From IMG/VR virus record IMGVR_UViG_3300044213_000107, positions 62,001 through 126,000 of that record: a DNA stretch of 64,000 bases; one strand, written 5' to 3'. Each line of letters opens with the position of its first letter. Positions within the stretch are counted from its first letter, which is position 1. This document shows positions 7,832-56,620 of the stretch, piece after piece. The translations under genes and the position numbers were made by a program. The notes beneath the pieces are model-generated. The model saw only the letters and a list, made by a program, of their open reading frames with translations, did not search any database and was not told the origin of the DNA.

Positions 7832-8102
7832 TGCCGGCCTCTTTTAAGATATCAAATACACTACCAATTTCAAACTCAACGGTGTTATCGTCGATTACTT
7901 GAATTTTTTTGTGTGTAAAAAAACTTCTCATATACATTTCTAAAAATTCCGCAACAGTCATTTCTGCAGTTTGAAAAAATTCAGAATTGAGTTTTTTATT
8001 TGTTGCAACCAAATAGTAGTAATTATCTCTGTGGTCCAAAGAAAATTCTATGGCCAAAGGCCGAAACTTTTGGTTTAATTGATCAACAAACTCAAAATCC
8101 AT
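7821..8102 (-). CDS. Hypothetical protein
   Basis: Overlaps both neighbours within the operon. Confidence 0.55.
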   Translation of the reverse strand: MDFEFVDQLNQKFRPLAIEFSLDHRDNYYYLVATNKKLNSEFFQTAEMTVAEFLEMYMRSFFTHKKIQVIDDNTVEFEIGSVFDILKEAGSDE

Positions 8103-19061: not shown

Positions 19062-19470
19062 AATCTTTAGCCAGTGTGTCCCAGACCTGTTGTTTTTCTT
19101 TGTATTCTTTAAGCAACATTTCATAGTGTTTTCTTGCGGCCTGTAACTCCTCCCAATCATGTTCAAGTTCTGGATTGCTGGCCAGTTTACTTGGTATGCG
19201 TAGTAATTCTTTGATTTCTTTTAAAGTTTCCGTTAAGCTTTCGCCGTTTATAACAATATCTGCATCTTTGCCAGTTAAGTCAAGTTTTCCGCTTTGACTG
19301 ATTAGTGCCGGTGTAGCAGAACCCCAGTTGGTGGAAGTAGAGTAATAAGGTGAATTAGGTGTAATGGCTAACCCTGCACCACCGCCAGTACCACTGCCAG
19401 TAATAACATAAGGAATGTTTGACAATGATATATTGCCCGATGTGCCAAATGTTACATTTGCGTAAGTCAT
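19051..19470 (-). CDS. Phage hypothetical protein with coiled-coil C-terminus
   Basis: G/T-rich N-terminus, then DADIVINGESL...NPELE..W..L. Confidence 0.65.
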   Translation of the reverse strand: MTYANVTFGTSGNISLSNIPYVITGSGTGGGAGLAITPNSPYYSTSTNWGSATPALISQSGKLDLTGKDADIVINGESLTETLKEIKELLRIPSKLASNPELEHDWEELQAARKHYEMLLKEYKEKQQVWDTLAKDFDN

Positions 19471-20306
19471 AGAACTATTTCGTATAATTTGGAGTCAAAC
19501 TCCTCAGCACGTTTTTCATAGCCTTTGTATCCACGTGGGTTACAGACAACGCGAGTTTGGCCAATCATATAATCAAAGGTGTCATGAGTGTGCCCGTGAG
19601 TCCACACTTGGATTTCTGGGTGATCCAAAATAAACTCGCTCAAATCACTACTGTATGCTCCGTTCATGAGAGTATCACTGGCATAACGTGGATGTGTGCT
19701 TAGTTTGCTGGGACTATGGTGTGTGACAACCACAACTGGCCGTGCACCGGCGTTGTTTGCTAATGCTTGACTAAAATACGCTAGGGTCTTTTCATGCTGA
19801 GCCACGGTATATTCCGGAGTCATTCGGTGATACATGTTTGTACTTTCGTTGAACATGGTAATCTGACGATAGTCATTCATAGCACTGGCCACGTGATACA
19901 TAGTCAACGCATCACGCCGATTCATGTCTGTCCACAATGTTGCCCCAAGGAATAACACACCATCAATTTCTAGACTTTCGTTTTCCAACAGGTGTACATT
20001 TTCGGGCAGTTGTTCCCGAATGTGATCGTAGGTTTTTTGAACTTGGAAACGATAGTGTTCGTGATTTCCCATAACTAAAATAGTTTTACGATATTTTTGA
20101 CTGCATTCTTCGAGTAAAAATCTGTAAAACCGATCGGGTCTTTGGTCAGCACGCTCGTGCTCCAACAATACCATGTCGGGGTTATACCAGTTTTTCTTGA
20201 TGCTTTTGGCTTCGCATAAATCGCCGGAGATGATCAAAACGTCACCACCTGGTAACGTTAGGTCAGCAAAGTCGATGTGTAGGTCTGAGATTACATTTAT
20301 ACGCAT
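19467..20306 (-). CDS. Calcineurin-like metallophosphoesterase
   Basis: SDLH, GDL, GNHEHY, THH and HGHTH motifs. Confidence 0.92.
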   Translation of the reverse strand: MRINVISDLHIDFADLTLPGGDVLIISGDLCEAKSIKKNWYNPDMVLLEHERADQRPDRFYRFLLEECSQKYRKTILVMGNHEHYRFQVQKTYDHIREQLPENVHLLENESLEIDGVLFLGATLWTDMNRRDALTMYHVASAMNDYRQITMFNESTNMYHRMTPEYTVAQHEKTLAYFSQALANNAGARPVVVVTHHSPSKLSTHPRYASDTLMNGAYSSDLSEFILDHPEIQVWTHGHTHDTFDYMIGQTRVVCNPRGYKGYEKRAEEFDSKLYEIVL

Positions 20307-25476: not shown

Positions 25477-26595
25477 TCAATTATCGCCCATTAATTCGTA
25501 TAGTTCTGGCAAGTACTCTCGCCAATCCATACCGTGATAATTTCGTGTATGTTCCATGTATCTGTAAAATTTTTTTCTACATTGTAGATCAAATGCACTA
25601 TTATCTATATATGCTTTTAAAAAATGTAAATCATTGTCATTTAAATAGCTAGATATTTTATCTTTTTCTTGTTCTGTTAAAATTGAATATGTTAAATATG
25701 GTGGATAACTCACAAAACCTATTTCATTAGTTAAAGAGATGCCAAGATTTTTCATATATTCGATATATTCTACTACACCAAATAAATTTAATATACTGTG
25801 TGTTGGATGAGATGCTAGATTAAATCCTTGAGATTTAAAATCAATTAAATTTAGATTGAATTTATTCCAGTCAGCACCTGTTCGTATAAATTCAAATTTT
25901 TTCTCAATTGCTTCAAAACTAACAACTAAATTAATTTTATTAAATTTTTTTAATATCGGAATATCTTTATAACTTACTGTTCCGTTTGTGTTAATATTTA
26001 AACAAGTATCGGGCCCTGCTGAATCTAATACCTTTTCTAAAAAAATACTTAACTTATTCATATTATACAACGGCTCTCCACCTATTATATTAACAAATTT
26101 TAAATTTTTAAAATCATCATCAGTGTAATCATAAACTGCAGATGGCCAAACATCTAAATTTTCAATTGACACACTAATGTCGTAATTATAAATTGTATTC
26201 GGTAATTTTAAAGCTTCGGGTATCCAACTACTGCTAGATGACGGGCGGCAATATCTACATTGGATATTACAATATCTTCCTGTATCAACAGTTAATTGCA
26301 TAAAATCTTGTACATTTGATTCTGTAGAATATAAATCTATGTAATTGGCTAAACTTAATCGTTTGCTGAAATTTTTCCCAGGGTGTAGAATTTCAGCATT
26401 ACGACATGTAGTACAATATTTTTCTGGCCATTCACCTTGGTCAAACGACTGTTTTATTTCATTGTAAACAGGACTTTGCAGCATTTTAGTGCGACTTGTT
26501 ATATTGGGTATGGGTTGAAAGCAGCACGGACCTTGGAATTGAGCATCGTATGCGTGTTCGAAATACCAGCAACGTATAGGTTCTTTTTGATTCAT
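25477..26595 (-). CDS. Radical SAM protein with N-terminal twitch/SPASM-like cluster, AT-rich
   Basis: CNIQCRYC, GGEPL and TNGT motifs; N-terminal C...PCC...CTTC. Confidence 0.9.
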   Translation of the reverse strand: MNQKEPIRCWYFEHAYDAQFQGPCCFQPIPNITSRTKMLQSPVYNEIKQSFDQGEWPEKYCTTCRNAEILHPGKNFSKRLSLANYIDLYSTESNVQDFMQLTVDTGRYCNIQCRYCRPSSSSSWIPEALKLPNTIYNYDISVSIENLDVWPSAVYDYTDDDFKNLKFVNIIGGEPLYNMNKLSIFLEKVLDSAGPDTCLNINTNGTVSYKDIPILKKFNKINLVVSFEAIEKKFEFIRTGADWNKFNLNLIDFKSQGFNLASHPTHSILNLFGVVEYIEYMKNLGISLTNEIGFVSYPPYLTYSILTEQEKDKISSYLNDNDLHFLKAYIDNSAFDLQCRKKFYRYMEHTRNYHGMDWREYLPELYELMGDN

Positions 26596-30605: not shown

Positions 30606-31319
30606 TTAGCGATTGCGACGGGGTTTAGCCAGACCTAATATTTCGAGTATTCTTATGTACATCCAGCCAATATCAAACTCCCACCATTTACGACTAAATT
30701 TTGGATTTGATCCATCGCCATGATGCGAATTATGGAGCTCTTCGCCGCCAATCCATATACCGATAGGAATCAAATTTCTCGATGTGTCGTTTGTATCATA
30801 ATTTCTATAACCCCACCAGTGTGCCAGTCCGTTAATAACACCCGCTGCCCAAAAGGGTATCCAAATCATTTGTATTCCCCATACTACGAATCCCGCGGAA
30901 CCAAAAAACAACAAGTCCATGACCAGCATCAAAAGAATTCCATAAAGATTATATGGAGTATATAAATGTCGTTCGATCCAGTCGTTAGGAGTACCAATGC
31001 CTAACTTTAATACTTCTGGATCTCGTTTAGCCTTTACATAATAAAATGCACCGCCAAATAATATATGCCAAATTCCATAGATTTTAGGACTATGTGGATC
31101 TGCCGGTGTATCGCTGGCCTGATGATGTCGGCGATGTACTGCTACCCATTCCCGTGTGGTCATACCAGTTGTAAGCCACAGCCAAAATCTCATCACATGT
31201 GATATTACTGGATGAAATGTAACTGCACGATGTGCTTGGCTACGATGTAGGTATAGAGTTACACACATGATTGTGATGTGTGTCATTATTAGTGTGGCTA
31301 TGATTTCTTGTACCGGCAT
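30606..31319 (-). CDS. desA: Membrane fatty acid (acyl-CoA/lipid) desaturase
   Basis: His boxes HRSQAH, HRRHH and HNSHH. Confidence 0.93.
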   Translation of the reverse strand: MPVQEIIATLIMTHITIMCVTLYLHRSQAHRAVTFHPVISHVMRFWLWLTTGMTTREWVAVHRRHHQASDTPADPHSPKIYGIWHILFGGAFYYVKAKRDPEVLKLGIGTPNDWIERHLYTPYNLYGILLMLVMDLLFFGSAGFVVWGIQMIWIPFWAAGVINGLAHWWGYRNYDTNDTSRNLIPIGIWIGGEELHNSHHGDGSNPKFSRKWWEFDIGWMYIRILEILGLAKPRRNR

Positions 31320-33232: not shown

Positions 33233-35449
33233 TTATGCCATAACTGGTACAACTTCTGCTAGACCCGAATACTGAGTTCTCCGCATCCATTCTGCGGCAA
33301 CTCTGTTAGCATCGTGCTGACTATTGCCTATTCCACCAAATCTATATAACTCTTGGCCATTACCATTAAGTATCTTCCACGAACCAGTAAATGCACCTGA
33401 TGCTTGTTGTTGTCGAACATCTTGTGTTGATCCAGGTACACTCAACTCTCGACCAGTTTCAGAATCGCGAATACCAAACTGTGCACCGCTCAAATTGTTT
33501 GCTTGATAGCGTCTTAGTTGATCTAATGCCGCAGCATCATTTGATGAAAGGATCGATGCTACTCCTGGATTATTCTCCGACCTACGGAATATCTCATACC
33601 TTCTGGGAGCGGTTGCAGGAAGCTCTGGGAATAGATCAATGGTACCAGGGTCTGCATGTTGTCCTACGGCCTGCGGCTCACCTGCCGTGGCACGCCAAGG
33701 TGCTGGTGCAGTATCTCCGTTTTTGATATCGCCTGGTTGTCCACGGTGCTTTGTGGGATCGTGGCTGACCAATACTTGGAAATCAGGCCGGTATTCTCTG
33801 ACATATTGATCTTGTACTATTCCTGCATCTTTGCCATTGGCGGCATTAAAACGATATAGAACTTCAACATCGTATGGCTGATTAACATCACCAATTCGGC
33901 GATGTTGTCTAAACAAAATCCATTCACCTTCGGGATTACTACGACGACCGCCCACTACAATGCCTTCGCCGGGCTTGCGTAACTGGCGTTCCAGTTGTGC
34001 TTGTTTGATAAAACTACGCAATGCAGCCTTGGGCATTTCGCCGGCTACATATCGTGCAAAATACAGTATAGTATCTTTATTTTCTCCTTTGGGTGCTAGG
34101 AGTTTATACAGTTTCTTTAGATATTCTTCACGATGTAGTTCAGGTTTGACTGCAGCATCCAGGGCCACAACAAATCGCAACATGGTGTTTTCAATTTGAT
34201 CAAAGTTAACGTCCAACCAATCGCCACCAGCACTACGAAACTCAATGTAATTGCTTTTAACATTGATACTGGTGTATTTGTCCGTGGATGGAGCATGTAT
34301 GGCCCGGCTGGCAAATTCATCTAAGTGATTACGCATTTTGTCTAACAAACCTTGAGCTTCGTCGGGGTTTCCTTGCACACGGTTCTTTACTTTTTCTATG
34401 GCAGATTTACAATAATGATTGCTAGTACGACCGAACTTTTCTAGCACATATTGGTCGCCTAGCAATACTGCAAGTTTAACATAATCCAATTTGTAGCGTT
34501 CAAAGTCTGGAACACTGACATTGATGTGTAGACCGGTACTGTCGTTGGTGTAGCATCCATAACTTTTTGCCCAGGCTTTGACCTTTTTAAGTTGGTCAAT
34601 CATTTCATCAACTGGCATTGGGGGACTAACAAACTCCAGGCCCGATTCTGAAGATTCATCATCGGGACTTAGACTGCCATCAGGTTCAACCACATAGTGC
34701 CCGGGTTCGCGACGTCCACCGTGATAATTACGGCTGGCATTCACCGGCATGCCTATTGCTTTGCTAAAACTATTGGCTACTGCATCAATGTCTGCTTCGG
34801 CGTCATCATCGTTGTAACTGTTGGCCCAATAAGGCCACATCAAACCAAAATGGTTTTCAATGTCGGTCATGTAAGGATAGTTTTGCTGAAGCCAATTGCC
34901 CGAATCGTCAAAGAGATCTTGTTGTTGTTCTTCACGAAATTCATCATAAGCGTCATGTTTGGTACTGTCATTGTCTTCCCAGAGATGATTGGCATAGTCT
35001 AAGATATCGTTTTTACCTGGTGTGTAATCTTCGTCGTCGGCCTTGCCTAACCAGTCTTTGATTTGAGTTTCATCAATATTGTTGGCTACCCATTCCACAA
35101 AATAGTCAAACCCATCACGGTCCCACCGATTGTCGATTTGTTCATCGCAGTCTTCATAAAATTTTTGTTCCAATTCTTCTATCGCCCGCTGAACAGTTCG
35201 GGTACTATTGTAATCACCGTCATTGAAAAATTCGTATATGTCACTAAAACTGCGAGTTCTTGTGTCTTGGTCGTAGTCGGGTTCCTGTTCATTATCACCG
35301 TTGCTGCTTTTGTCAACTGGAACAATCATTTCAAACTCCATGCCAGCCCGGGCATCGATTTTCTTTGCCTGACTACGAAGGCTGGTGGGGCTCATGGCAA
35401 TTTCTGATAACTGCTGTTCTGATAATGGTTTAATGTCTGTGTAACGCAT
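33233..35449 (-). CDS. Putative amidoligase (COOH-NH2 ligase type 2) domain protein, probably virion-packaged
   Basis: GMEFEM, GLEFVSPP, STGLHINVS and IEFR motifs; acidic insert; MRYTDIKPLSE leader. Confidence 0.75.
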   Translation of the reverse strand: MRYTDIKPLSEQQLSEIAMSPTSLRSQAKKIDARAGMEFEMIVPVDKSSNGDNEQEPDYDQDTRTRSFSDIYEFFNDGDYNSTRTVQRAIEELEQKFYEDCDEQIDNRWDRDGFDYFVEWVANNIDETQIKDWLGKADDEDYTPGKNDILDYANHLWEDNDSTKHDAYDEFREEQQQDLFDDSGNWLQQNYPYMTDIENHFGLMWPYWANSYNDDDAEADIDAVANSFSKAIGMPVNASRNYHGGRREPGHYVVEPDGSLSPDDESSESGLEFVSPPMPVDEMIDQLKKVKAWAKSYGCYTNDSTGLHINVSVPDFERYKLDYVKLAVLLGDQYVLEKFGRTSNHYCKSAIEKVKNRVQGNPDEAQGLLDKMRNHLDEFASRAIHAPSTDKYTSINVKSNYIEFRSAGGDWLDVNFDQIENTMLRFVVALDAAVKPELHREEYLKKLYKLLAPKGENKDTILYFARYVAGEMPKAALRSFIKQAQLERQLRKPGEGIVVGGRRSNPEGEWILFRQHRRIGDVNQPYDVEVLYRFNAANGKDAGIVQDQYVREYRPDFQVLVSHDPTKHRGQPGDIKNGDTAPAPWRATAGEPQAVGQHADPGTIDLFPELPATAPRRYEIFRRSENNPGVASILSSNDAAALDQLRRYQANNLSGAQFGIRDSETGRELSVPGSTQDVRQQQASGAFTGSWKILNGNGQELYRFGGIGNSQHDANRVAAEWMRRTQYSGLAEVVPVMA

Positions 35450-35484: not shown

Positions 35485-36048
35485 TTATTGATAAAGGCTA
35501 GCGAAGATTTCTTCTTGGCTTTGCAGGATTAAACGATACAAATTACGGTTTTTATGAGCAATTTCTTGTCCTAAACTTACCAATGTGGGTGGTGGCAGTT
35601 TGATGCGACTTTCAACTTCCTGCCCGTCAGTGAAGTTTTTGACCGCAAGTCCGTGCTTTTCAGCCAAGTGACGTATGGGACGATTCCAGGTCAAACAGTG
35701 CATGTAGAGATTTGAGTAGCCGCGATTGCGTGCCCAAACAATGGCTTCTTGCATAAGTTGATCAGCAATGCCTTGGTTACGGTGCTCATGTGCAACAATA
35801 ACCCCAAATTCAATATCAGTTTCGTTAACTACTGCAATGTGTACGGTGCCTACCCATAAACCCCTACTTTCAGCAACTAAAAAATAGTTATTGTCGGGGT
35901 GGTTGACAAAACTTTCAGTTAGATGTTCTAGATAAAAATCAGTAACAGGCACACCAAAAAACAATCTTAGTGTTTCTTCGTCTTGCCCTTTGAGCCAATC
36001 GGCATACCAACCGTACTCTTTTTCGCTTAAAAATCTTGTGGTTATCAT
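35485..36048 (-). CDS. GNAT family N-acetyltransferase
   Basis: EFGVIVAHEHRNQGIADQLM...N..IRHLAEKHG. Confidence 0.88.
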   Translation of the reverse strand: MITTRFLSEKEYGWYADWLKGQDEETLRLFFGVPVTDFYLEHLTESFVNHPDNNYFLVAESRGLWVGTVHIAVVNETDIEFGVIVAHEHRNQGIADQLMQEAIVWARNRGYSNLYMHCLTWNRPIRHLAEKHGLAVKNFTDGQEVESRIKLPPPTLVSLGQEIAHKNRNLYRLILQSQEEIFASLYQ

Positions 36049-36056
36049 ACGAATAT

Positions 36057-36344
36057 TTATTGTGGTTTTACTACTAATTGATTGTCGCTGGCAAAATTTA
36101 ACACAAAGTTTAGTGCCAGTGGTTCTACTTCACCTAACTCATCGTCTAAGACTACACTACGAACACCATCTATGACCATAGGCATAAGATATTTAGAATA
36201 AGTTAATGCATGTTGTCTAACATCATGTTGCGACGTAAATGTAGCAGATTTGTAGTGTGCAAAAACTGAACATAAACGATCTGCCCAGTCGCTGGGACGA
36301 AACACCATACCAGACTGTGTTCGTCCGTAAATTATGTACTTCAT
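36057..36344 (-). CDS. DUF3579-like protein
   Basis: G.T..G.VFRPSDWADRL...FVLNFASDNQL. Confidence 0.75.
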   Translation of the reverse strand: MKYIIYGRTQSGMVFRPSDWADRLCSVFAHYKSATFTSQHDVRQHALTYSKYLMPMVIDGVRSVVLDDELGEVEPLALNFVLNFASDNQLVVKPQ

Positions 36345-36534: not shown

Positions 36535-36690
36535 TTATAGTTCTCTCGCGGCTTGGCGTCTATTGTATTGGTTTAACCAAAAATCTACTTCTGCGGCATT
36601 TGTTGGACGTTTGCTGATAATAAATTGCTCTAATGCACTGGCTTGGTTTATTTTAAAAAACTCGGTAAGTTTTTTTACAAGTTTTGTCAT
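36535..36690 (-). CDS. 51-aa helical protein (possibly DUF3563-like)
   Basis: MTKLVKKLTEFFKINQASALEQFIISKRPTNAAEVDFWLNQYNRRQAAREL; AGGAG RBS. Confidence 0.55.
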   Translation of the reverse strand: MTKLVKKLTEFFKINQASALEQFIISKRPTNAAEVDFWLNQYNRRQAAREL

Positions 36691-36759
36691 TGTGTGACTC
36701 CTATTATATAAGTGTTTGTACTAAGATATTTATCTCAGTGTTTCTACTAATATATAATA

Positions 36760-36778
36760 TTATATTGCGTTGCCGCAA
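36760..36778 (-). promoter_or_regulatory. Operator-like motif TTGCGGCAACGCAATATAA inside a TTGACT-16-TATAAT promoter
   Basis: Matches 42759-42777 at 16 of 19 positions. Confidence 0.55.
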
Positions 36779-36787
36779 AAAGTCAAA

Positions 36788-37396
36788 CTATTTGGCAATT
36801 ACTGATTCAGTATAATCGTAGTTGGCCATAAACCCCCAGGACTGTTGCAGTCTTCGTGGGCTTGCATCTGCATTCGGGATGATACGATGTACACGAGCTC
36901 CGTTGTTTGTATGGAATCGTGCCACTGGATCTTGACGATTTTCCAAGTATCCGCGGATTTGCTCGGGATCTGTTGGTGCAACTGTAAAATCTGTGCTTAA
37001 CGCAGGAATTGGACTCATAGTCACAAAATTACGTATAGCCGGCATGTTTTCTCGTATCCATGCGCTGGACATACGAATAATTTTTGCTCCGGGATTTGCG
37101 ATTATAGTAGTTGCATCAGTTTTAAACACACTATAAAAGATAGCGTATCTTGGCTCGGTATTGATGTTGCTGCCAGCATTTAGAATTTCATCAATAACAT
37201 CGGGTAGTGTGTTGGTATAAGCTACACACAAAACTGCTGCCGGGATCGAATTCTCAACAAGCATGAATATTTCGCGATCTTCGCTCATTCTGCGACTTAA
37301 CGGACGTTCATCAGTAATACTATGCACAGGATCTTGGTGCATGTATTCTAGCCAGTTGTTATTAAAATCATCAGAATGTAGTCGTTGAAGTGTCAT
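36788..37396 (-). CDS. Malonyl-CoA decarboxylase catalytic-domain-like protein
   Basis: IFYSV, FVTMSPIP and DPVARFHTNNGARVHRI...ADAS...QSWGFMANYDY motifs. Confidence 0.8.
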   Translation of the reverse strand: MTLQRLHSDDFNNNWLEYMHQDPVHSITDERPLSRRMSEDREIFMLVENSIPAAVLCVAYTNTLPDVIDEILNAGSNINTEPRYAIFYSVFKTDATTIIANPGAKIIRMSSAWIRENMPAIRNFVTMSPIPALSTDFTVAPTDPEQIRGYLENRQDPVARFHTNNGARVHRIIPNADASPRRLQQSWGFMANYDYTESVIAK

Positions 37397-37442: not shown

Positions 37443-37468
37443 AAAAAAACGCCCTTGCGGGCGTTTTA
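37443..37468. terminator. Intrinsic terminator
   Basis: AAAACGCCC-TTGC-GGGCGTTTT. Confidence 0.85.
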
Positions 37469-38371: not shown

Positions 38372-39283
38372 TTACTGGTAAGGAACATATGCAGGAATGG
38401 TTTCTAGGCCAAGTTGGCGTGCACGAGTAATCCTATGATTGCCATCTAATGCCCAACCATTGCCATCTACTACCACTGGCTTTTTGGCAATATCTTCGGG
38501 AGTAATTCGATTTATGTGTTCCCAGTCTAGACTAATATATCTACGATGTGGGTCATCTTGATGGTAGTATTCTGGAGTATTAATATCCGACAATGGTAGT
38601 TCTACAAATTGCCAAAATGGATGTTCTAGCACCGGATCATCTAAATGAAACTCATTGTGAATACCTTTAACAAACTTTAATAGTCGGCGTCCACTAACCA
38701 CATGTGGAAATTTACGATGTTCTATTTCCACGGTATGATCAATCATGTGTGGATGGATACGCCCTACCAGTGCAAGATCTAATTCTTTTAATACACGATC
38801 ACATTCGGCGTCTTTGTATAATATACCAATTCCGCCCCAGCTACGCCATAGTGCAATATTAGTAGGGTAATCGTCTATTAGTATGTTAGGTGTGCTGTCT
38901 GGACGTTTAGCATATTGATATTTTTCGTGTGTAAACAATATTTCTTCAGGCGGCATGTTTTTAAAATAATGATTTAACCATTGAGTTTTTTCATCACTGC
39001 TGCCTTCTACATCACTCATCAGCGGACTGCTTAAAATATTGTATTCGCCGGCACGTTGTAGTATGCCTTTGATTAAATGTGTGGCGTTTGGTAATAATGG
39101 TAAATTACGAAAGAAGCCCGACTTTTTTGCATGTTGACTTATTCCACCACCTTTGTGTACATCACGAAACTTTTTAACATGATGCTGGCGTGCAACTTCC
39201 CCAAAAAAGTCCGCTAACACGCCATCCATGTCTACATAGATAAGTGAATCTGTTTTGGTACTAGATACTTCAAAAGCTTTCAT
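38372..39283 (-). CDS. HAD-family 5'(3')-nucleotidase-like domain fused to a ParB/Srx-like domain
   Basis: YVDMDGVLADF and LIDD motifs; C-terminal PVVV...LDGNHR. Confidence 0.8.
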   Translation of the reverse strand: MKAFEVSSTKTDSLIYVDMDGVLADFFGEVARQHHVKKFRDVHKGGGISQHAKKSGFFRNLPLLPNATHLIKGILQRAGEYNILSSPLMSDVEGSSDEKTQWLNHYFKNMPPEEILFTHEKYQYAKRPDSTPNILIDDYPTNIALWRSWGGIGILYKDAECDRVLKELDLALVGRIHPHMIDHTVEIEHRKFPHVVSGRRLLKFVKGIHNEFHLDDPVLEHPFWQFVELPLSDINTPEYYHQDDPHRRYISLDWEHINRITPEDIAKKPVVVDGNGWALDGNHRITRARQLGLETIPAYVPYQ

Positions 39284-39301: not shown

Positions 39302-39892
39302 CTATCTTCGCTCCACAATACGATCCGCAAGTCCATACGCAACTGCTTGCTCTGCACTCATAAAGAAATCACGTTCCATATCTGCAGAAATTTCATCAAA
39401 TGTTTTTCCTGCACTATTGTGGCTAACATAAATCTGTGTAAGATTCTTCTTTAAAGCTAAGATTTCCTCAACTTGGATCAGCATATCTGTGGCTTGTCCA
39501 CGTGCGCCGCCCGATGGCTGATGAATCATGTGACGAGCATTTGGCAAGATCAATCGTTTCCCGGCAGCACCGGCGTTTGCAAGTAAGCTTCCCATACTGC
39601 AGGCCTGGCCCATAACAATGGTAGATACATCAGGCTTAATGAACTGCATAGTATCATAGATTGCCATGCCAGCAGTGACAACTCCACCGGGTGAGTTGAT
39701 GTAAAAGAGGATGTCTGCATCTGGATCTTCGCTTTCTAAAAAAAGTAATTGACTAACAACAAGACTAGCAGAATGTTCGTTAACATCTGTGTCTAGCATT
39801 ACAATGCGGTCTTTGAGTAAACGACTATAGATGTCGTAAGCTCGTTCACCGTTTGAAGTTTTTTCTAGTACGGTTGGTACAAAATTTGGCAT
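39302..39892 (-). CDS. clpP: ATP-dependent Clp protease proteolytic subunit
   Basis: [33 protein letters not shown] and ERDFFM. Confidence 0.97.
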
Positions 39893-46962: not shown

Positions 46963-47471
46963 CCTGTAATCTGTAATGTATATCTATCTTCTATGCCAAT
47001 ATTAGCTGCTGCATGTGGTAAGTCATATGCCCATTCAACAATATCACCTGCCGACCAATTAACTATGCCTTCGCCATTGACTTCACTGTAATGTCCCGGT
47101 TGCCAGTCTTCTAAAAAAACTACAGCACGACGAATGCGATGTTCCTGTCCCTGCAAGTTAAATATTTTAACATACTTAACATATAAATCAGAATGAGTTG
47201 GTAATATTGTACCAGTCTTCATTCGATAGTAACTGGTACCAATATCTTTCCAACTATATTTTGTAAACAAGTCAACAAATCTATAGTTCCACACAGGTTG
47301 TGTGCTACGCATATCGCACATTTCTCCTGTAAACTGTCCAGTATAGCCTTGCTCCCTCCATCGATTAACACTCGCTTGGTCATTAAAAGATTCTCGATTG
47401 TAGTCTAATGTTTTAAAATCATCGGTCCAGAATGGTGTTATTTTAAATTTACTGTAAGCGGGTGTTGCCAT
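46953..47471 (-). CDS. Cupin/2OG-Fe(II) oxygenase-like protein
   Basis: LPTHSD (HxD) ... HAAAN ... RYTLQITG; likely start MATPAY. Confidence 0.65.
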   Translation of the reverse strand: MATPAYSKFKITPFWTDDFKTLDYNRESFNDQASVNRWREQGYTGQFTGEMCDMRSTQPVWNYRFVDLFTKYSWKDIGTSYYRMKTGTILPTHSDLYVKYVKIFNLQGQEHRIRRAVVFLEDWQPGHYSEVNGEGIVNWSAGDIVEWAYDLPHAAANIGIEDRYTLQITGWV

Positions 47472-48690
47472 AATGAATAACCTTAACTCCTTGAATGTTA
47501 GATGAATATGTGCGCCACGGATCAACAATAACGCTGCCTTCTGAGATTTCGCAGTACATACCTTGTTGTTCGACAACTCCAGCATAGCCATAAGTGATTT
47601 GTTTATTATGAGCTAACAAAACAACACCCTTTACTGGCTTGTCTGGCGCCGGATCGCCTGTTAATGGATCAATGTATGTAGGTTTGTAACCAAATTCTTG
47701 ACAATAATATCCAACTAATAAACTATAACTACCTTCTGTGTATGCTACATCGGGTTTGTATGCTTTACCGTGAATATAAATCGGTAGGTCGTATAACTTT
47801 GCTTGTTCTACCAATGACTGTGCCATTAATCGTGCTTGTTTTTCTCTGGCATGCATGATAGCATCAAACAAATCATAACCTAAATCAAGTTCTTGGGCGA
47901 GATATCTTAATGCAATATTATCGCGCGGATGACACGGACCTGCATCTCCAAGTCCTGCAGTCATATACTTAGGCCCCATGATCCGCATATTAGATTTAGC
48001 AAGTGCTGCAGTCACAACATCAACATTAATGTTTCCTTGTCGAATAGCAACGTCTTGAATCATGTTAGCTAGACCAATTTTGGCACTAATGAATGTATTA
48101 TAAAATACCTTGATACATTCAGCTTCGTCCCAGGTTCCAACTTCGTAGCGCGGATCATTTTCCATTATAGTTTGATAAAATTCAATTAGTTCCTGTGCAT
48201 CACCGGTTACGGATCCATCTTCGGTTCCAATAATAACCATTTCGGGATTGACCATATCCCACTCTACTGTGCCCATGGCAATCAAATATGGGTTATATAC
48301 AAATCGTGCGTTGGTGATATGATTTCGCAATTGTTTTCTTGTAGTACCAGGCAACACAGTTGAAATCAAAACAATCAATTGATCTGCAACAGCATATTGA
48401 TTAATATCTTGCAAAACTTGATTAACTAATGTATAATCGAAGTCTTTATTAGGTAAATGTGTAATTGGCTGTTCGCCACCATAAACAGGGTCGTGTGGTG
48501 TTTGGACTGCAATAAAGACTATGTCTTTGCCAACTACTGCTTCTTTTAAGGTATTAGCTATTTTGATTTTGTTGCTGGTGCGTGGATAAATATCATACCC
48601 AGTAACATCGTGTTTGCTAGCCATAACTTCGGCGCAGGCCAAACCTAATTTTCCAATTCCTATAAACCCTACGTTTTTTCTATTACTCAT
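47449..48690 (-). CDS. UDP-glucose/GDP-mannose dehydrogenase family protein
   Basis: GIGKLG, AVQTP, ISTV.PGT, KVFYNTF, GPCHPRD and YKP motifs. Confidence 0.92.
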   Translation of the reverse strand: MSNRKNVGFIGIGKLGLACAEVMASKHDVTGYDIYPRTSNKIKIANTLKEAVVGKDIVFIAVQTPHDPVYGGEQPITHLPNKDFDYTLVNQVLQDINQYAVADQLIVLISTVLPGTTRKQLRNHITNARFVYNPYLIAMGTVEWDMVNPEMVIIGTEDGSVTGDAQELIEFYQTIMENDPRYEVGTWDEAECIKVFYNTFISAKIGLANMIQDVAIRQGNINVDVVTAALAKSNMRIMGPKYMTAGLGDAGPCHPRDNIALRYLAQELDLGYDLFDAIMHAREKQARLMAQSLVEQAKLYDLPIYIHGKAYKPDVAYTEGSYSLLVGYYCQEFGYKPTYIDPLTGDPAPDKPVKGVVLLAHNKQITYGYAGVVEQQGMYCEISEGSVIVDPWRTYSSNIQGVKVIHYGNTRLQ

Positions 48691-49823: not shown

Positions 49824-50744
49824 ATGAAAATTAGTGATGTATTGAATGATGATATTTCTCGCCGTGGTTTTTTGCGTGGACTAGCAGGAGCTGCCGCAGT
49901 AGGTGCAACCGGGGCTCATGCTACTGCAAAATCTATTGTGTATCAAGTAGTAGAACCCGGTGACACTGTTTATTCAATTGCACAGCAAAATGGCATGCGG
50001 CCCGAAGATTTATTTCGGTTAAACAATCTAAACAAGAACTCTAAATTGATTCCCGGACAAAAAATACGTGTGCCGGATACATCAAAAATGATTCCTGATC
50101 CTGCGGTACAAATTCCCACTGATGAATTAGGAAACTTTATTTCTAGCATTGATCAACACAAAGTTGATCAAATAATGCATAGATATGTTACAGCCAAAGA
50201 AAAAGAATCGATCATCCCACCTCCCGCAGACTCACACAAAAAATCAACTGCTAAATCTCACGAATACAAGCCAGTGACAAACAGTCCGTTTGAGTTGGTG
50301 TTGCGCAATGTTGCCATGCGTGCAGGAATTATTAAATCAGAATTGGCTGCATTTATGGGGCAATGTGCACACGAATCAGCAAAATTTACCACAGTAAAAG
50401 AACTAGACAGTGGCAGTAAATATGAAGGTCGTCGTGACATAGGAAACATTTATCCCGGGGATGGACAAAAATACAAAGGTCGTGGATTTATACAAATTAC
50501 CGGCAGATATAATTATACAGAAGCGTCCAAGGATCTGGGAATAGATCTAGTCAATCATCCCGAGCTAGCCGAAAGACCTGATGTAGCAGCTCGTGTGAGT
50601 ATTTGGTTCTGGCAAAAATTTGTTCAACCAAAGATTAAAAATTGGGCCGATAATCGTGCAGTTACTCGTGTAATCAATCCAGGATTACGTGGTGAAAAAA
50701 ATCGAGAAAAATATACTCAAAGTTTTAAAACAGCCGGGCTATAA
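49824..50744 (+). CDS. LysM plus glycoside hydrolase family 19 peptidoglycan hydrolase with a twin-arginine motif
   Basis: SRRGFL; VEPGDTVYSIA LysM; AAFMGQCAHES...YKGRGFIQITGRYNY. Confidence 0.9.
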   Translation: MKISDVLNDDISRRGFLRGLAGAAAVGATGAHATAKSIVYQVVEPGDTVYSIAQQNGMRPEDLFRLNNLNKNSKLIPGQKIRVPDTSKMIPDPAVQIPTDELGNFISSIDQHKVDQIMHRYVTAKEKESIIPPPADSHKKSTAKSHEYKPVTNSPFELVLRNVAMRAGIIKSELAAFMGQCAHESAKFTTVKELDSGSKYEGRRDIGNIYPGDGQKYKGRGFIQITGRYNYTEASKDLGIDLVNHPELAERPDVAARVSIWFWQKFVQPKIKNWADNRAVTRVINPGLRGEKNREKYTQSFKTAGL

Positions 50745-52468: not shown

Positions 52469-53194
52469 TTATTGCATATTAGCAATGATAAATTCTGCTT
52501 CGGGAATTCTAGTATGACCGTTTTGACTACCGAGTACCACAACCCGGCGAATACCACGGTCAGTTTTTACAGTTAGTATAATACAACCACCAGCGGCATG
52601 TGTGGTTCCGGTTTTGCTTACAATAAATTCGTAGGTTTTTCCAATTAATGGATTTGTATTTTTGAATATTAAATATTTTTTTCGAAGCTGTATTTCTACT
52701 TTTGTTTGTTTTGCCGCACTAACTATTAACGGATATTGTTCTGCTTGATTTAATAACTTCAGTAAGTCGTTTGCTGTACTTGTATTTTCTGCGTTTAACC
52801 CAGATGCGTCGGCATAGGTAGTATTGTTCATGCCAAATTCACGAGCATACATATTCATGTCTGCAACACACCCTGCATAACTTCGTGTATAGTTTTTACA
52901 TAACATATCAGCGGCATGATTGTCACTGTGCACAAGAGTTAGGTAAATTAACTCCTGCCGTGTTAAACGTAGTTGTCGATTGTATTGAAATGTTTGATCT
53001 AGTGGTTGATTTGCTCGTAATACTGCAATAACTGTCATTACCTTTGTAACACTAGCAATTGACAATACTTCATCTCTGTTTTTACCATCCAATATTACGT
53101 TGTCTTGATCAGCAATCAGCCAAGACTTGGCAGTTAGATCTTTGGCCGACACTGCGCAACTTAGAAAAAATAACAAATATATTAGGTACCGCAT
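52469..53194 (-). CDS. D-alanyl-D-alanine carboxypeptidase/endopeptidase (peptidase S11)
   Basis: SVTK (SxxK), SDN (SxN) and KTG motifs; signal peptide; promoter TTGATA-17-TATAAT at 53201-53229. Confidence 0.92.
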   Translation of the reverse strand: MRYLIYLLFFLSCAVSAKDLTAKSWLIADQDNVILDGKNRDEVLSIASVTKVMTVIAVLRANQPLDQTFQYNRQLRLTRQELIYLTLVHSDNHAADMLCKNYTRSYAGCVADMNMYAREFGMNNTTYADASGLNAENTSTANDLLKLLNQAEQYPLIVSAAKQTKVEIQLRKKYLIFKNTNPLIGKTYEFIVSKTGTTHAAGGCIILTVKTDRGIRRVVVLGSQNGHTRIPEAEFIIANMQ

Positions 53195-54987: not shown

Positions 54988-55875
54988 TCATTCGTTCATC
55001 CTAAATCTTATGTATTCTGTTAATTTGTCAGCTACATCAATTTCGCAATATTTTTCAAATCCACCAAAACCTGGATTACTATTTGCTTCACAAACAACAA
55101 AACCATTTTCTCCAAATAGTAAATCAACTCCAGCAATGTTTAATCCTAGTACTCGTGCAGTTTCAATGGCCAGGTACTCAATTTCTGGTGTGACTTCAAA
55201 ATTAGCACCTGTACCACCTCCGGTAATATTTGCACGAAAATCACCTTCAGGAGCTGTACGCTTCATGGCACCCAATACCCGCCCGCCAATTACAAACACA
55301 CGCAGATCTTCTCCTGGCCTAGCACTCATATACTCCTGTACAATCATTGTTTTTTTAGCGCCAAGCGTATCAATAAATTCCATTAATTTTTTATAATCTC
55401 TTTTACGTTCGCATAGATATACGCCTTCGCCGTAGCTGCCGGTGACCAATTTTACCACACAAGGAAATCCTATGTGTTGTTCAACTAGGCCGTCATCAAT
55501 AGGATAGCGTACCATCATGGTCTTGGGAATCGGTATGTTACTTGCGGCCAACCGTTGTCCTGTTCTTAATTTGTCACGAACTATATTAATGCTTACACTC
55601 GGATTAACGCACGGAACGCCCATTTGCTCAAATTGTCTAATAATTGCTAACTGAAATGGTAAAATACCAGCACCCAATCTTACTAAAACTAGATTTGGTG
55701 TTGGTAAGTCTTGCCCTTTGTATTTTACAGATTCTTGAAGATTTTTGCTGACTACAATGTCAAAGTCGTCAGGATGTGCAACTGTTGTGGTTATTCCTTT
55801 GCTGGAAAAACTATCTACTAGCCTGCTGGTTTCGTATTCATTACGTTCTTGTTTTGATATTATCAATACTGTCAT
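54988..55875 (-). CDS. rimK: RimK family ATP-grasp alpha-L-glutamate ligase
   Basis: RDKL, IPKT, PCVVK..GSYGEGV, VQEY, DLRVFVIG, FRAN, AGVD and EANSNPG motifs. Confidence 0.9.
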   Translation of the reverse strand: MTVLIISKQERNEYETSRLVDSFSSKGITTTVAHPDDFDIVVSKNLQESVKYKGQDLPTPNLVLVRLGAGILPFQLAIIRQFEQMGVPCVNPSVSINIVRDKLRTGQRLAASNIPIPKTMMVRYPIDDGLVEQHIGFPCVVKLVTGSYGEGVYLCERKRDYKKLMEFIDTLGAKKTMIVQEYMSARPGEDLRVFVIGGRVLGAMKRTAPEGDFRANITGGGTGANFEVTPEIEYLAIETARVLGLNIAGVDLLFGENGFVVCEANSNPGFGGFEKYCEIDVADKLTEYIRFRMNE

Positions 55876-56620
55876 TTGATTGTGTCCATGTTACTATTTC
55901 CCAGGTGCCGTTATGATGTTCAACCAAAGCAGTACACGACTCGACCCAGTCACCATCGTTCATATAAGTTATATCATCTATGTATTTAATCTCAGCATGA
56001 TGTATGTGTCCGCAGATAACACCGTCATATCCACGCTTTTTACAATAATTTGCAATTGTAACTTCAAATTTAAACATAAAGTCTATGGCTTTTTTGACTC
56101 TGTGTTTAAGGTATTTGCTAAGGCTCCAGTAACCGAACCCCAAACGATGGCGGATCCAATTAAATCTGCTATTGACACCAAGAATGAAATCATATGCTTT
56201 ATCTCCAAGAAAACTCAACCACGGTGCCAATCTTGTAATACCATCAAACATATCTCCGTGCACCACAAGATAATGTCGGCGATCCACCCCAATGTGTTCT
56301 GTTTGATTGCATATCTCTACACTGCCAAACGTGGCGGCATAAGGCATCATTGGTCGTAAAAATTCATCGTGATTACCAGCTATGTAAACAACTCGTGTAC
56401 CACGTTTGGCATGACCCAATATACGGCGAATCACATTAGTATGGCTTTGCTTCCATCGAAGTTTGTTTTGTTGTATCTTCCAAGCATCAATTATATCTCC
56501 TACTAGATATAAAGTTTCGCAAGTATTGTGTTTAAGAAAATTGTTTAATTGCTCGGCCTTACAATCTTTTGTGCCAAGATGTACATCACTGACAAAGATA
56601 CTACGATAGGTTTTTTGCAT
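55841..56620 (-). CDS. UDP-2,3-diacylglucosamine diphosphatase-like (LpxH-like) metallophosphoesterase
   Basis: SDVHLG, GDIID, GNHD, HGD, GHIHH and NDGDWVES motifs. Confidence 0.88.
   Translation of the reverse strand: MQKTYRSIFVSDVHLGTKDCKAEQLNNFLKHNTCETLYLVGDIIDAWKIQQNKLRWKQSHTNVIRRILGHAKRGTRVVYIAGNHDEFLRPMMPYAATFGSVEICNQTEHIGVDRRHYLVVHGDMFDGITRLAPWLSFLGDKAYDFILGVNSRFNWIRHRLGFGYWSLSKYLKHRVKKAIDFMFKFEVTIANYCKKRGYDGVICGHIHHAEIKYIDDITYMNDGDWVESCTALVEHHNGTWEIVTWTQSNDSIDNIKTRT

What the first reader, a model, noticed from the sequence alone, without database searches (positions are those of the whole stretch)
36788..37396. Phage-encoded stand-alone malonyl-CoA decarboxylase catalytic domain
The motifs FYS, TMSPIP, DPVARFH.NNGA and QS.G.M.NY.Y match the MCD catalytic domain, but the protein is only 202 aa and lacks the N-terminal helical domain. 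MCD converts malonyl-CoA to acetyl-CoA. With the desaturase, GNAT and LpxH-like genes, this points to rerouting of host acyl-CoA and lipid flux. I do not recall it as a common phage auxiliary gene.
Basis: partly seen in the sequence, partly recalled or inferred. Interest (0 to 1): 0.6.

Follow-up and report, generated by a model that had tools for sequence, protein, structure and literature searches.

The report
Minimal malonyl-CoA decarboxylase in jumbo phage
A freshwater jumbo phage carries a stripped-down 202-residue version of malonyl-CoA decarboxylase that keeps every catalytic residue, so it could drain the host's only building block for fatty-acid synthesis, but this activity has not been tested.

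Summary
ORF 36788-37396 (minus strand, 202 aa) matches Pfam MCD (PF05292, 99.9 bits). It lacks the N-terminal helical domain and most of the beta5-beta6 helical insert.

Every residue that defines classical MCDs is invariant in the family, including the Ser128/His162 dyad, Phe87, Tyr193/195, Arg160 and Asp177. A confident model (pLDDT 95.7) aligns best to solved MCD catalytic domains (Z 18-22). Decarboxylating GNAT-like domains come next (Z 17-18), and acetyltransferases are well behind (Z 13.5 or less).

The window is part of a 260.7-kb virus record from freshwater. The ~200-aa form is a well-supported clade on a long branch, seen only on phage-like contigs. It is under strong purifying selection and is intact in independent samples.

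It is an accessory gene. Two complete related genomes lack it. A terminator precedes it and a promoter-like site follows it.

The proposed lipid module is only partly supported. The desaturase is real but near-core and independent of MCD. The GNAT is not co-inherited. The LpxH-like ORF scores far below its family cut-off.

Most likely it is an autonomous malonyl-CoA decarboxylase that shuts down host fatty-acid synthesis. I found no literature report or catalogued phage homologue. I rate it a new variant of a known kind.

The parts
36788..37396 (-). Gene for the 202-aa minimal malonyl-CoA decarboxylase-like protein. [quoted passage not shown]
   Evidence: ORF. PF05292 at 99.9 bits. PDB MCDs at E ~1e-13. 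AF2 model pLDDT 95.7. VIA-align Z 18-22 to MCDs.
37013..37015 (-). Codon of Ser128, in the TMSPIP motif. It is the equivalent of the catalytic Ser329 of human MCD and Ser312 of RpMCD.
   Evidence: Alignment to 4ksa/4ksf/4ks9. Role taken from PMC3701320. Invariant in 42 family members and in 64 classical MCDs. Sequence read.
36911..36913 (-). Codon of His162, in the DPVARFH motif. It is the equivalent of the catalytic His423 of human MCD and His389 of RpMCD. Arg160, two residues earlier, matches the Arg that contacts the CoA 3'-phosphate.
37136..37138 (-). Codon of Phe87, in the FYS motif on strand beta4. It is the equivalent of human Phe288, proposed to form the non-polar pocket for the leaving CO2.
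36812..36820 (-). Codons of Tyr193-Asp194-Tyr195, in the NYDY motif. One of the tyrosines is the equivalent of human Tyr456, which holds the catalytic His. By ungapped spacing from His162 it is Tyr195.
   Evidence: Both Tyr residues are invariant.
37446..37467 (-). Intrinsic-terminator-like hairpin (9-bp stem with 5 GC pairs, followed by a T-run). It lies between the upstream Endonuclease_NS gene and the MCD start, and a ~40-bp AT-rich stretch follows before the ATG.
   Evidence: sequence read. This is a consensus match only; function is inferred.
36759..36786 (-). Sigma-70-like promoter (TTGACT, 16-nt spacer, TATAAT; 11 of 12 matches). It begins two bases after the MCD stop codon and faces the next small ORF (36535-36690).
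   Evidence: This is a consensus match only. The total number of promoter-like sites in the region does not exceed the shuffle expectation (19 found, 16.1 expected).
39302..39892 (-). Context only: ClpP protease gene, the most constant neighbour of MCD in related phages (upstream in 15 of 20 MCD-anchored loci).
35485..36048 (-). Context only: GNAT N-acetyltransferase gene. It is not consistently linked to MCD.
   Evidence: Pfam. Co-occurrence counts.
30606..31319 (-). Context only: DesA-family fatty-acid desaturase gene with three His boxes. It is near-core in this phage group and independent of MCD.

Best explanation
The gene encodes an autonomous, cofactor-independent malonyl-CoA decarboxylase reduced to its bare GNAT-fold catalytic domain.

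Inferred chemistry, by homology with human and bacterial MCD: malonyl-CoA binds along strand beta4. Arg160 and the beta4-alpha loop/helix (Gly103, Leu/Ile106) hold the CoA phosphates. The Ser128/His162 dyad, with His162 positioned by Tyr195, polarises the thioester carbonyl and stabilises the enolate. CO2 leaves over Phe87, and Ser128 protonates the carbanion to give acetyl-CoA.

The N-terminal helical domain serves oligomerisation in classical MCDs and contributes little or nothing to the active site. The helical insert that masks the GNAT sheet edge is also not part of the active site. Both have been shed.

Inferred physiology: the gene is expressed from its own cassette in a variable island of a freshwater jumbo phage whose host is probably a betaproteobacterium such as Polynucleobacter. 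The enzyme drains malonyl-CoA, the only extender unit for type II fatty-acid synthesis. That would stop new phospholipid and lipid A synthesis and return acetyl-CoA, and spare NADPH, for phage replication.

What is shown: the family, the fold, the residue conservation, phage restriction as far as sampled, accessory status, and purifying selection. What is inferred: the substrate, the activity and the benefit to the phage.
For: - Profile and sequence: PF05292 at 99.9 bits. Bacterial MCD structures at E ~1e-13 and human MCD at ~1e-8.
- Residues: 23 positions that are near-invariant in 64 classical MCDs are also conserved in 20 short-form representatives. These include Ser128, His162, Phe87 and Tyr193/195. 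The same residues, plus Asp177, are invariant in the 42-sequence family alignment; Arg160 is Arg or Lys.
- Published mutagenesis (PMC3701320): S329A lowers kcat 110-fold and H423N 7-fold. The active site lies within one monomer's catalytic domain. MCDs keep Asp where CurA has the Arg tied to S-transfer, and the query has Asp177 there.
- Fold: model pLDDT 95.7, pTM 0.90. MCDs score Z 18.4-22.1 with 188-200 of 202 residues aligned. Decarboxylating GNAT-like domains of SxtA, CurA and GphF score Z 17.1-18.3. Acetyltransferases score Z 13.5 or less.
- Selection: dN/dS is about 0.05-0.24 with synonymous sites saturated. The gene is intact, with no indels, in contigs from independent freshwater samples.
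- Autonomy: MCD is present in 5 of 41 fully flanked related loci. It is absent from two complete related genomes of 343-344 kb. A terminator lies upstream and a promoter-like site downstream.
- The N-terminal domain is dispensable in nature: an independent bacterial clade of 212-308-aa MCDs sits among acyl-CoA metabolism genes.
Against: - No enzyme assay and no expression data exist. No RNA run holds the sequence.
- No MCD has been crystallised with substrate, so the binding mode itself is modelled on CurA.
- Motif A is only partly kept.
- Losing the N-terminal domain and about 45 residues of the insert could alter substrate choice or stability.
- Combined with host acetyl-CoA carboxylase, a free MCD would create an ATP-wasting futile cycle, which is an odd thing for a phage to impose (inference).
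- Candidate hosts often already have a classical MCD: 48 of 201 genomes in the family sampled. The phage enzyme must therefore differ in regulation or dosage to matter.
- The gene is dispensable for close relatives.
Confidence: 0.6

Rival explanations
1. The chemistry is the same but the substrate differs. The open, insert-less domain may decarboxylate a carrier-bound or alternative carboxyacyl thioester, such as malonyl-ACP or methylmalonyl-CoA. It would then work like the ~200-aa GNAT-like loading domains of polyketide synthases, for example by making acetyl-ACP primers or removing a different metabolite.
For: The protein is the same size as the CurA, GphF and SxtA decarboxylase domains and is nearly as close to them structurally (Z 17-18) as to MCDs. 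The helical insert that covers the sheet edge in MCDs is cut from 60-104 residues to 32-34 between the catalytic Ser and His. That could open the site to a protein partner.
Against: The sequence signature is that of MCD, not of the PKS domains (11-15% identity to the latter, 26-30% to MCDs). Every MCD-specific conserved residue is retained. No acyl-carrier protein (PF00550) is encoded in the 260-kb record, although the host ACP could serve.
Confidence: 0.2
2. It is one step of a phage pathway shared with the neighbouring GNAT acetyltransferase and the large amidoligase. It would generate acetyl-CoA locally, or process a malonylated intermediate, for a peptide or small-molecule modification.
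For: GNAT, Amidoligase_2 and MCD are neighbours in the window and in several related contigs. L003 also carries a GGACT/AIG2-like gene nearby.
Against: Gene order is shuffled between relatives. GNAT lies within 10 kb in only 9 of 20 MCD-anchored loci and the amidoligase in 11 of 20. MCD and GNAT co-occur in 0 of 41 ClpP-anchored loci. In L016-L018 and L020, MCD abuts ClpP with neither partner nearby. All these contigs belong to one phage lineage, so shared order is weak evidence of shared function.
Confidence: 0.08
3. It has reverted to, or evolved into, an acyl-transferase that uses malonyl- or acetyl-CoA to modify a host or phage target, rather than a decarboxylase.
For: It has the GNAT fold and a CoA-binding groove. 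Many phages encode GNAT acetyltransferases.
Against: The position of the GNAT general-acid Tyr is occupied by His162, as in all MCDs. The general-base Glu of GNATs is not part of the MCD signature. Asp177 stands where CurA needs Arg for S-transfer. Acetyltransferases rank far below decarboxylases in the structural comparison.
Confidence: 0.04
4. It is a decaying fragment of a captured bacterial MCD with no function.
For: It is about half the length of classical MCDs, and relatives can do without it.
Against: There are at least 137 clusters of 187-216 aa, all of the same architecture. The clade is monophyletic with support 97. dN/dS is well below 1. Catalytic residues are invariant. The gene is intact in independent samples. 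It is only 24% identical to the candidate host's MCD.
Confidence: 0.02

Closest known systems
Classical malonyl-CoA decarboxylase (EC 4.1.1.9): human MLYCD and bacterial MatA-type enzymes; structures 4f0x, 2ygw, 4ksa, 4ksf, 4ks9
   Same: The catalytic GNAT-fold domain is the same, at 26-30% identity over 188-200 aligned residues with Z 18-22. The Ser/His dyad, Phe, Tyr, Asp and the whole conserved signature are identical.
   Different: There is no N-terminal helical (oligomerisation) domain. The beta5-beta6 helical insert is cut to 32-34 residues between Ser and His, against 60-104 in classical forms. The protein is 202 aa rather than 400-560 aa. It is encoded by a phage rather than in a malonate-utilisation-like cluster; the candidate host's copy lies in a GntR-MCD-TctC cluster.
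GNAT-like decarboxylase loading domains of polyketide and saxitoxin synthases (CurA GNAT_L 2ree/2ref, GphF 6mfc, SxtA 7uci)
   Same: They are about the same size (~200 aa) and are compact GNAT decarboxylases with a His plus Ser/Thr dyad. They score Z 17-18 with 181-182 aligned residues.
   Different: Identity is only 11-15%. Those domains are embedded in megasynthases next to ACP domains, whereas this protein is free-standing and the record encodes no ACP. Asp177 stands in place of the CurA Arg404 linked to S-transfer.
Independently reduced bacterial MCDs (P0162 at 212 aa, P0216 at 250 aa, P0147, P0155 and others)
   Same: They have a truncated or absent N-terminal domain and a shortened insert of 39-58 residues, with the full catalytic signature. 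They show that stand-alone MCD domains persist in nature.
   Different: They form a separate clade (support 96) nested among classical MCDs, not sister to the phage clade. They sit in cellular acyl-CoA metabolism neighbourhoods with acyl-CoA dehydrogenases and enoyl-CoA hydratase.
Phage GNAT N-acetyltransferases (for example PHROG 1249, and the window's own GNAT at 35485-36048)
   Same: They share the GNAT superfamily fold and a CoA thioester ligand.
   Different: The catalytic residues differ: His replaces the general-acid Tyr. Structural similarity is weak (BFVD best E 2e-5, TMq 0.53 or less). The MCD protein matches no PHROG family.

Membership tests
Malonyl-CoA decarboxylase (Pfam MCD, EC 4.1.1.9) | C-terminal catalytic domain profile PF05292 above the gathering score | tested here: met
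   99.9 bits against a cut-off of 23.2, E 2.3e-28. Also found by the genome-level search.
Malonyl-CoA decarboxylase (Pfam MCD, EC 4.1.1.9) | Catalytic Ser/His dyad (human S329/H423) | tested here: met
   S128 and H162 align to the dyad. Both are invariant in 42 family members and in 64 classical MCDs. Their roles come from PMC3701320.
Malonyl-CoA decarboxylase (Pfam MCD, EC 4.1.1.9) | Supporting residues: the Phe over which CO2 leaves (F288), the Tyr holding the His (Y456), and the Asp at the CurA-Arg404 position | tested here: met
   F87, Y193/Y195 and D177 are invariant.
Malonyl-CoA decarboxylase (Pfam MCD, EC 4.1.1.9) | GNAT-like catalytic fold superimposable on solved MCDs | tested here: met
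   Z 18.4-22.1, rmsd 2.7-2.9 A, 188-200 of 202 residues aligned. Foldseek E ~1e-13.
Malonyl-CoA decarboxylase (Pfam MCD, EC 4.1.1.9) | N-terminal helical domain (PF17408, MCD_N) that mediates oligomerisation | tested here: not met
   There is no PF17408 hit. The conserved DPVH motif starts at residue 22, against ~170-300 in classical forms. A classical MCD used as a control shows MCD_N.
Malonyl-CoA decarboxylase (Pfam MCD, EC 4.1.1.9) | Large helical insert between strands beta5 and beta6 | tested here: not met
   Profile positions ~147-210 are unmatched. Ser-to-His spacing is 34 residues, against 60-104 in classical forms.
Malonyl-CoA decarboxylase (Pfam MCD, EC 4.1.1.9) | Conversion of malonyl-CoA to acetyl-CoA and CO2 | not testable with these tools
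   This needs an enzyme assay.
PKS-type GNAT-like decarboxylase loading domain (CurA GNAT_L and relatives) | Embedded in a synthase module with an adjacent acyl-carrier domain | tested here: not met
   The ORF is free-standing at 202 aa. No PF00550 match exists in the 260-kb record.
PKS-type GNAT-like decarboxylase loading domain (CurA GNAT_L and relatives) | Compact GNAT fold with a His-Thr/Ser dyad | tested here: met
   Z 17.1-18.3 to 7uci, 2ree and 6mfc. The dyad is present. Identity is only 11-15%, so the protein works like this family but is not a member of it.
Canonical GNAT N-acetyltransferase | Tyr general acid and Glu general base, with motif A (Q/R)xxGx(G/A) | tested here: not met
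   His162 occupies the Tyr position, as in MCD and CurA. Only the G103..L/I106 part of the relaxed MCD motif A is kept. Pfam acetyltransferase families do not hit.

The most novel reading that the evidence does not exclude
The ~200-aa MCD is a phage-specific host-takeover enzyme. By collapsing the malonyl-CoA pool it would switch off bacterial fatty-acid, phospholipid and lipid A synthesis within minutes of infection. That would be a new class of auxiliary metabolic gene, acting at the single committed precursor of lipid synthesis. It would also be the smallest natural MCD, showing that the oligomerisation domain and helical insert are dispensable for catalysis.
Probability: 0.35. Interest if true: 0.7.

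Novelty: new variant of a known kind. Interest (0 to 1): 0.55.

Why it matters
Malonyl-CoA is the sole extender unit for bacterial fatty-acid synthesis. An enzyme that destroys it would be a one-gene switch for host membrane and lipid A production. Phage genes known to touch lipids mostly modify existing acyl chains, as desaturases do. A phage MCD acting at the committed precursor appears in none of the papers, phage genomes or viral structure libraries searched here.

If it is active, three things follow:
- It adds a new node to the map of viral metabolic reprogramming in freshwater bacterioplankton.
- It gives enzymologists a natural minimal MCD of 202 aa, with no oligomerisation domain, for structural work with bound substrate. 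That has not been achieved for any MCD, according to PMC3701320.
- It offers a compact tool for lowering malonyl-CoA in engineered cells.

If it is inactive or acts on another thioester, it still marks an independent case of domain minimisation in a medically studied enzyme family.

Tried and rejected
- Deposited phage genomes (INPHARED): tblastn with the protein and megablast with 15 kb of context gave no match. No cultured relative carries the gene.
- Nearest cultured phages: only weak (33%) amidoligase matches, to Ralstonia phage RsoM2USA and Agrobacterium phage Atu_ph07.
- PHROGs: no family for the MCD protein.
- NCBIfam: no meaningful model, only TraF-like at E 0.14.
- Homodimer prediction (complex prediction, two copies): it returned 'no answer' with score 0.00. 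This is evidence neither for nor against self-association.
- Expression: no RNA run holds the region, so transcription could not be assessed.
- Context look-ups for P0132 and P0155 returned contigs of 1-2 kb that were too short to be informative.
- Sister group: the apparent sister of the phage clade, P0148, has support of only 80 and is a eukaryotic gene beside Spo11. I do not infer a donor lineage.
- Active-site geometry: model coordinates are not exposed to the Python box, so inter-residue distances could not be measured.
- GNAT/amidoligase/MCD operon: considered and rejected on co-occurrence counts.
- LpxH: considered and rejected as a partner on score (51.5 bits against 134) and distance.
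- Recent capture from the host: rejected, at 24% identity to the classical MCD of the Polynucleobacter MAG.
- Literature: searches for MCD with jumbo phage, with phage, and with auxiliary metabolic gene found nothing relevant.
Full report
**Observation**

The ORF at 36788..37396 on the minus strand is real: 202 aa with an ATG start.
- FYS at residues 87-89
- TMSPIP at 126-131
- DPVARFHTNNGA at 156-167
- QSWGFMANYDY at 185-195

Pfam's MCD C-terminal-domain model PF05292 matches at E 2.3e-28, 99.9 bits against a cut-off of 23.2. The match comes in two stretches that cover profile positions about 21-146 and 211-252 of 253. A phmmer search of PDB sequences returns only malonyl-CoA decarboxylases with significant scores. 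Agrobacterium vitis 4ksf, Cupriavidus 4ks9 and Rhodopseudomonas 4ksa score E ~1e-13, and human 4f0x and 2ygw score E ~1e-8. The query aligns from about residue 170-195 of those chains onward.

The protein is therefore a complete catalytic domain that lacks two parts of the classical enzyme. The first is the ~170-200-residue N-terminal helical domain. There is no PF17408 hit, whereas a classical MCD scanned the same way shows it. The second is about 45-60 residues of the helical insert between strands beta5 and beta6.

The window is bases 62001-126000 of a 260,723-bp IMG/VR virus record that CheckV estimates as 74% complete. This is a jumbo phage.

**Is the active site intact?**

The MCD structure paper (PMC3701320) defines the catalytic machinery:
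- A Ser/His dyad (human S329/H423, RpMCD S312/H389). S329A loses 110-fold in kcat and H423N loses 7-fold.
- A strictly conserved Phe (F288) over which the carboxylate and CO2 lie.
- A Tyr (Y456) that holds the His.
- An Arg two residues before the His that can contact the CoA 3'-phosphate.
- An Asp conserved in MCDs at the position where CurA has the Arg linked to S-acetyl transfer.

The paper also states that the active site lies in a groove of a single monomer's catalytic domain. The other subunits and the N-terminal domain contribute little or nothing to it.

In the query these positions are S128, H162, F87, Y193/Y195, R160 and D177. In a 42-sequence alignment of the ~200-aa family, S128, H162, F87, Y88, Y193, Y195, D177 and 39 further columns are invariant. 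I aligned 149 representatives from an exhaustive profile search to the family HMM. The 23 positions that are near-invariant in 64 classical MCDs are the same residues in 20 short-form representatives. The only systematic architectural differences are these:
- N-terminal length: the DPVH motif sits at residue ~19-29 in the short form, against ~170-300 in classical forms.
- Ser-to-His spacing: 32-34 residues in the short form, 39-59 in intermediate forms, and 60-104 in classical forms.

**Fold**

An AlphaFold2 model built on the family alignment is very confident (pLDDT 95.7, pTM 0.90). Foldseek against the PDB ranks the five MCD entries first (E ~1e-13, TMq 0.71-0.79). The decarboxylating GNAT-like domains of CurA, GphF and SxtA follow, and N-acetyltransferases come only after those.

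Re-alignment with VIA-align gives the same ranking:

| Group | Z | Other detail |
|---|---|---|
| MCDs | 18.4-22.1 | 188-200 of 202 residues aligned, rmsd 2.7-2.9 A, 26-30% identity |
| SxtA / CurA / GphF decarboxylase domains | 17.1-18.3 | 11-15% identity |
| Best acetyltransferase | 13.5 | |

So the protein is an MCD by sequence. By size and compactness it resembles the ~200-aa PKS loading decarboxylases.

**Distribution and origin**

The word-indexed search found at least 137 clusters (at 90% identity) of 187-216-aa proteins. All carry PF05292, at 45-99% identity to the query, and nearly all come from metagenomes.

The exhaustive HMM search of 1.84 billion representatives gave 2,173 hits at E 1e-3 or better, but only 20 at E 1e-30 or better. 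Short-form representatives score 123-317 bits and classical 400-560-aa MCDs score 117 bits or less.

I built a maximum-likelihood tree of 110 catalytic cores (185 columns, LG+G4). The short form is one clade of 21 representatives with SH-aLRT support 97, on a stem of 0.4 substitutions per site. Its nominal sister has weak support (80) and is a eukaryotic gene, so no donor can be named.

Every informative context for the short clade is phage-like:
- Contigs of up to 225 kb with the same neighbours as the window.
- 13 IMG/VR contigs.
- A 5.3-kb contig of small unknown ORFs for the deep member P0134.

A pattern scan of one genome for each of 185,579 prokaryotic species found a single hit. It is a 3.3-kb contig binned into a Polynucleobacter MAG, and it carries the phage gene order ClpP-MCD-EndoNS-amidoligase. 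That MAG also has a classical 428-aa MCD (MCD_N plus MCD) in a GntR-MCD-TctC cluster. That protein is only 24% identical to the phage protein.

In 201 sampled genomes of that bacterial family, 48 carry MCD. Every cellular copy is the long form, with frames of 427-606 aa covering the full profile.

A second clade of reduced MCDs (212-308 aa, support 96) arose independently. It lies in bacterial acyl-CoA metabolism neighbourhoods. This shows that nature tolerates loss of the N-terminal domain.

**Selection and population data**

The region recurs in freshwater metagenomes from about 10 further studies besides the probable source sample (11 studies in all). None is an RNA library.

Contigs from two independent runs span the whole gene with 14-15 substitutions and no indels. 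Contigs from two further runs cover most of it without gaps. The two variants listed inside the gene, at 36935 and 37055, both fall on third codon positions.

Nei-Gojobori estimates between homologues give dN of 0.17-0.46 with synonymous sites at or near saturation. Where dN/dS can be computed it is about 0.05-0.24. The gene is under strong purifying selection.

**Genomic setting: core module or accessory cassette?**

In the window the gene order on the minus strand is ClpP, NT5C/ParB-like, Endonuclease_NS, MCD, a 51-aa ORF, DUF3579, GNAT, and a 738-aa Amidoligase_2 protein.

In 20 MCD-anchored loci from relatives, the neighbours within 10 kb were as follows:

| Neighbour | Loci with it (of 20) |
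|---|---|
| ClpP (upstream) | 15 |
| Amidoligase | 11 |
| GNAT | 9 |
| Endonuclease_NS | 9 |

The gene order is shuffled between loci. In L016-L018 and L020, MCD directly abuts ClpP with no GNAT or amidoligase within 10 kb.

I then anchored on ClpP instead (80 viral loci at 74-91% ClpP identity). MCD is present in only 5 of 41 loci with at least 8 kb on both sides. MCD and the GNAT never co-occur there: 5 loci have MCD only and 7 have GNAT only.

Whole-record searches settle the question. Two complete relatives have no MCD at all. One is 344 kb with terminal repeats and 100% complete, and the other is 343 kb and 99% complete. A 400-kb relative has only a 19-bit fragment.

In the window, a terminator-like hairpin (37467-37446) separates MCD from the upstream gene. 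An 11/12 sigma-70-like promoter (36786-36759) starts two bases after its stop codon. Together these features describe a self-contained accessory cassette in a variable island, not a fixed operon member.

- Desaturase: it is real. ORF 30606-31319 has three His boxes. It matches NCBIfam's DesA-family desaturase model at E 1.7e-118, 396.2 bits, just under the equivalog cut-off of 400. The protein-atlas search agrees. However, it is present at 58-70% identity in all three complete genomes that lack a bona fide MCD, and also in MCD-bearing records. It is near-core for the group and does not track MCD.
- LpxH-like ORF (55841-56620): it reaches 51.5 bits against an LpxH cut-off of 134 and lies about 18 kb away. 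The other Metallophos ORF (19467-20306) has no LpxH signal.
- The record encodes no acyl-carrier protein.

A general interest of this phage group in host lipids is plausible. A dedicated MCD-desaturase-GNAT-LpxH pathway is not supported.

**Mechanism proposed**

This is inferred from homology. The protein binds malonyl-CoA along beta4. Ser128 and His162, with His162 held by Tyr195, polarise the thioester and stabilise the enolate. CO2 leaves over Phe87, and protonation yields acetyl-CoA. No cofactor is needed.

Without the helical domain, the enzyme would not form the classical MCD oligomers. Its exposed GNAT sheet edge might allow a canonical GNAT dimer, but the one prediction job gave no verdict.

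Physiologically, draining malonyl-CoA would halt type II fatty-acid synthesis, and with it phospholipid and lipid A production. That would free acetyl-CoA and NADPH for phage replication.

The weak points of this reading are:
- There is no assay or expression data.
- A futile cycle with host acetyl-CoA carboxylase is possible.
- Many candidate hosts already own a classical MCD.
- Sister phages can do without the gene.

I put about 0.75 on decarboxylase chemistry on a malonyl thioester. I put about 0.4 on fatty-acid shutdown as the selected benefit, and 0.6 on the combined statement as worded.

**Rivals**

| Rival | Confidence |
|---|---|
| Same chemistry on malonyl-ACP or another carboxyacyl thioester | 0.2 |
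| A step in a GNAT/amidoligase modification pathway | 0.08 |
| An acyl-transferase | 0.04 |
| A dead fragment | 0.02 |

Each is discussed with its evidence in the structured fields.

**Novelty**

JGI's automatic annotation already labels some homologues 'malonyl-CoA decarboxylase', so the family assignment is not new. I found no precedent for the following points:
- The ~200-aa form is a distinct clade, phage-restricted as far as sampled, with a fully conserved active site.
- It is absent from 50,697 deposited phage genomes, from PHROGs and from BFVD.
- No paper in the searchable library links MCD to phages.

I rate it a new variant of a known kind, of moderate interest until activity is shown.

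Only genetic code 11 was used.

Noticed in passing
window 30606-31319 (-): This is a DesA-family fatty-acid desaturase of 237 aa with three His boxes. It covers only positions 9-241 of the 385-position NCBIfam model and scores 396.2 bits against a cut-off of 400. It is conserved at 58-70% identity in all complete relatives examined, so it is a near-core lipid-modifying gene of this jumbo-phage group.
   Followed up: partly
G007:C1:14385-18318 (record of L016): A related 228-kb phage record carries five tandem desaturase-like paralogues (26-29% identity to the window's desaturase, frames of 259-294 aa). The 400-kb relative G003 has two extra distant copies.
   Followed up: no
window 33233-35449 (-): This 738-aa protein has an Amidoligase_2 (PF12224) core at residues ~224-480. 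Homologues of 840-868 aa occur in relatives. The only cultured-phage matches are jumbo phages Ralstonia RsoM2USA and Agrobacterium Atu_ph07, at 33% identity over the core. A GGACT/AIG2-like gene lies nearby in L003. This suggests a peptide or amino-acid ligation system.
   Followed up: partly
window 38372-39283 (-): This 303-aa protein fuses an NT5C-type 5'(3')-deoxyribonucleotidase domain (residues ~14-163) to a C-terminal ParB-like segment (PHROG 620 hit at residues 267-300).
   Followed up: no
window 36057-36344 (-): A DUF3579 (PF12112) protein at 101.7 bits is encoded by the phage, with no PHROG family. It is also present next to the GNAT in the 80%-identical relative L107.
   Followed up: no
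window 39302-39892 (-) and 62975-63925 (-); L007 4306-4878 and 6545-7135: The phage encodes ClpP and, about 23 kb away, a ClpX/ClpB-like AAA+ protein (AAA_2 plus ClpB_D2-small). Relative L007 has two ClpP genes flanking a radical-SAM gene. ClpP at 74-91% identity is shared by at least 599 IMG/VR stretches.
   Followed up: partly
window 5244-5789, 8092-9120, 10331-11434, 25477-26595, 54988-55875, 52469-53194, 47449-48690, 49824-50744: The window is rich in auxiliary genes. They include Fe/Mn superoxide dismutase, UvdE UV-endonuclease, two radical-SAM proteins, a RimK-like ATP-grasp ligase, a D-Ala-D-Ala carboxypeptidase (S11), UDP-glucose dehydrogenase, and a GH19 plus LysM protein with a TAT-like signal.
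   Followed up: no
window 36754-36787 joined to 39322-39359 (read laying joints): Contigs from three freshwater runs join the sequence just downstream of the MCD stop to the start of ClpP. That skips about 2.57 kb holding MCD, Endonuclease_NS and NT5C. The sides are short (22-62 letters) and the likeness threshold was 85%. These may be relatives with a different island content rather than true deletions.
   Followed up: no
L022 / G001:C165 (Polynucleobacter MAG, 3.3-kb contig): The only 'cellular' genome hit for the short MCD is a small contig with phage gene order. It is probably a phage fragment mis-binned into the MAG. It gives a tentative host clue, Polynucleobacter, which fits the betaproteobacterial DUF3579.
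   Followed up: partly
P0162, P0216, P0147, P0155, P0139 (loci L111, L112): An independent bacterial clade of reduced MCDs (212-308 aa, short insert) lies next to acyl-CoA dehydrogenase, enoyl-CoA hydratase and ArgJ genes. This uncharacterised cellular 'mini-MCD' group is worth its own look.
   Followed up: partly
window 55841-56620 (-) and 19467-20306 (-): These are two calcineurin-like phosphoesterases. The first has a sub-threshold resemblance to LpxH (51.5 bits against a cut-off of 134). The second resembles generic phosphoesterases only.
   Followed up: partly
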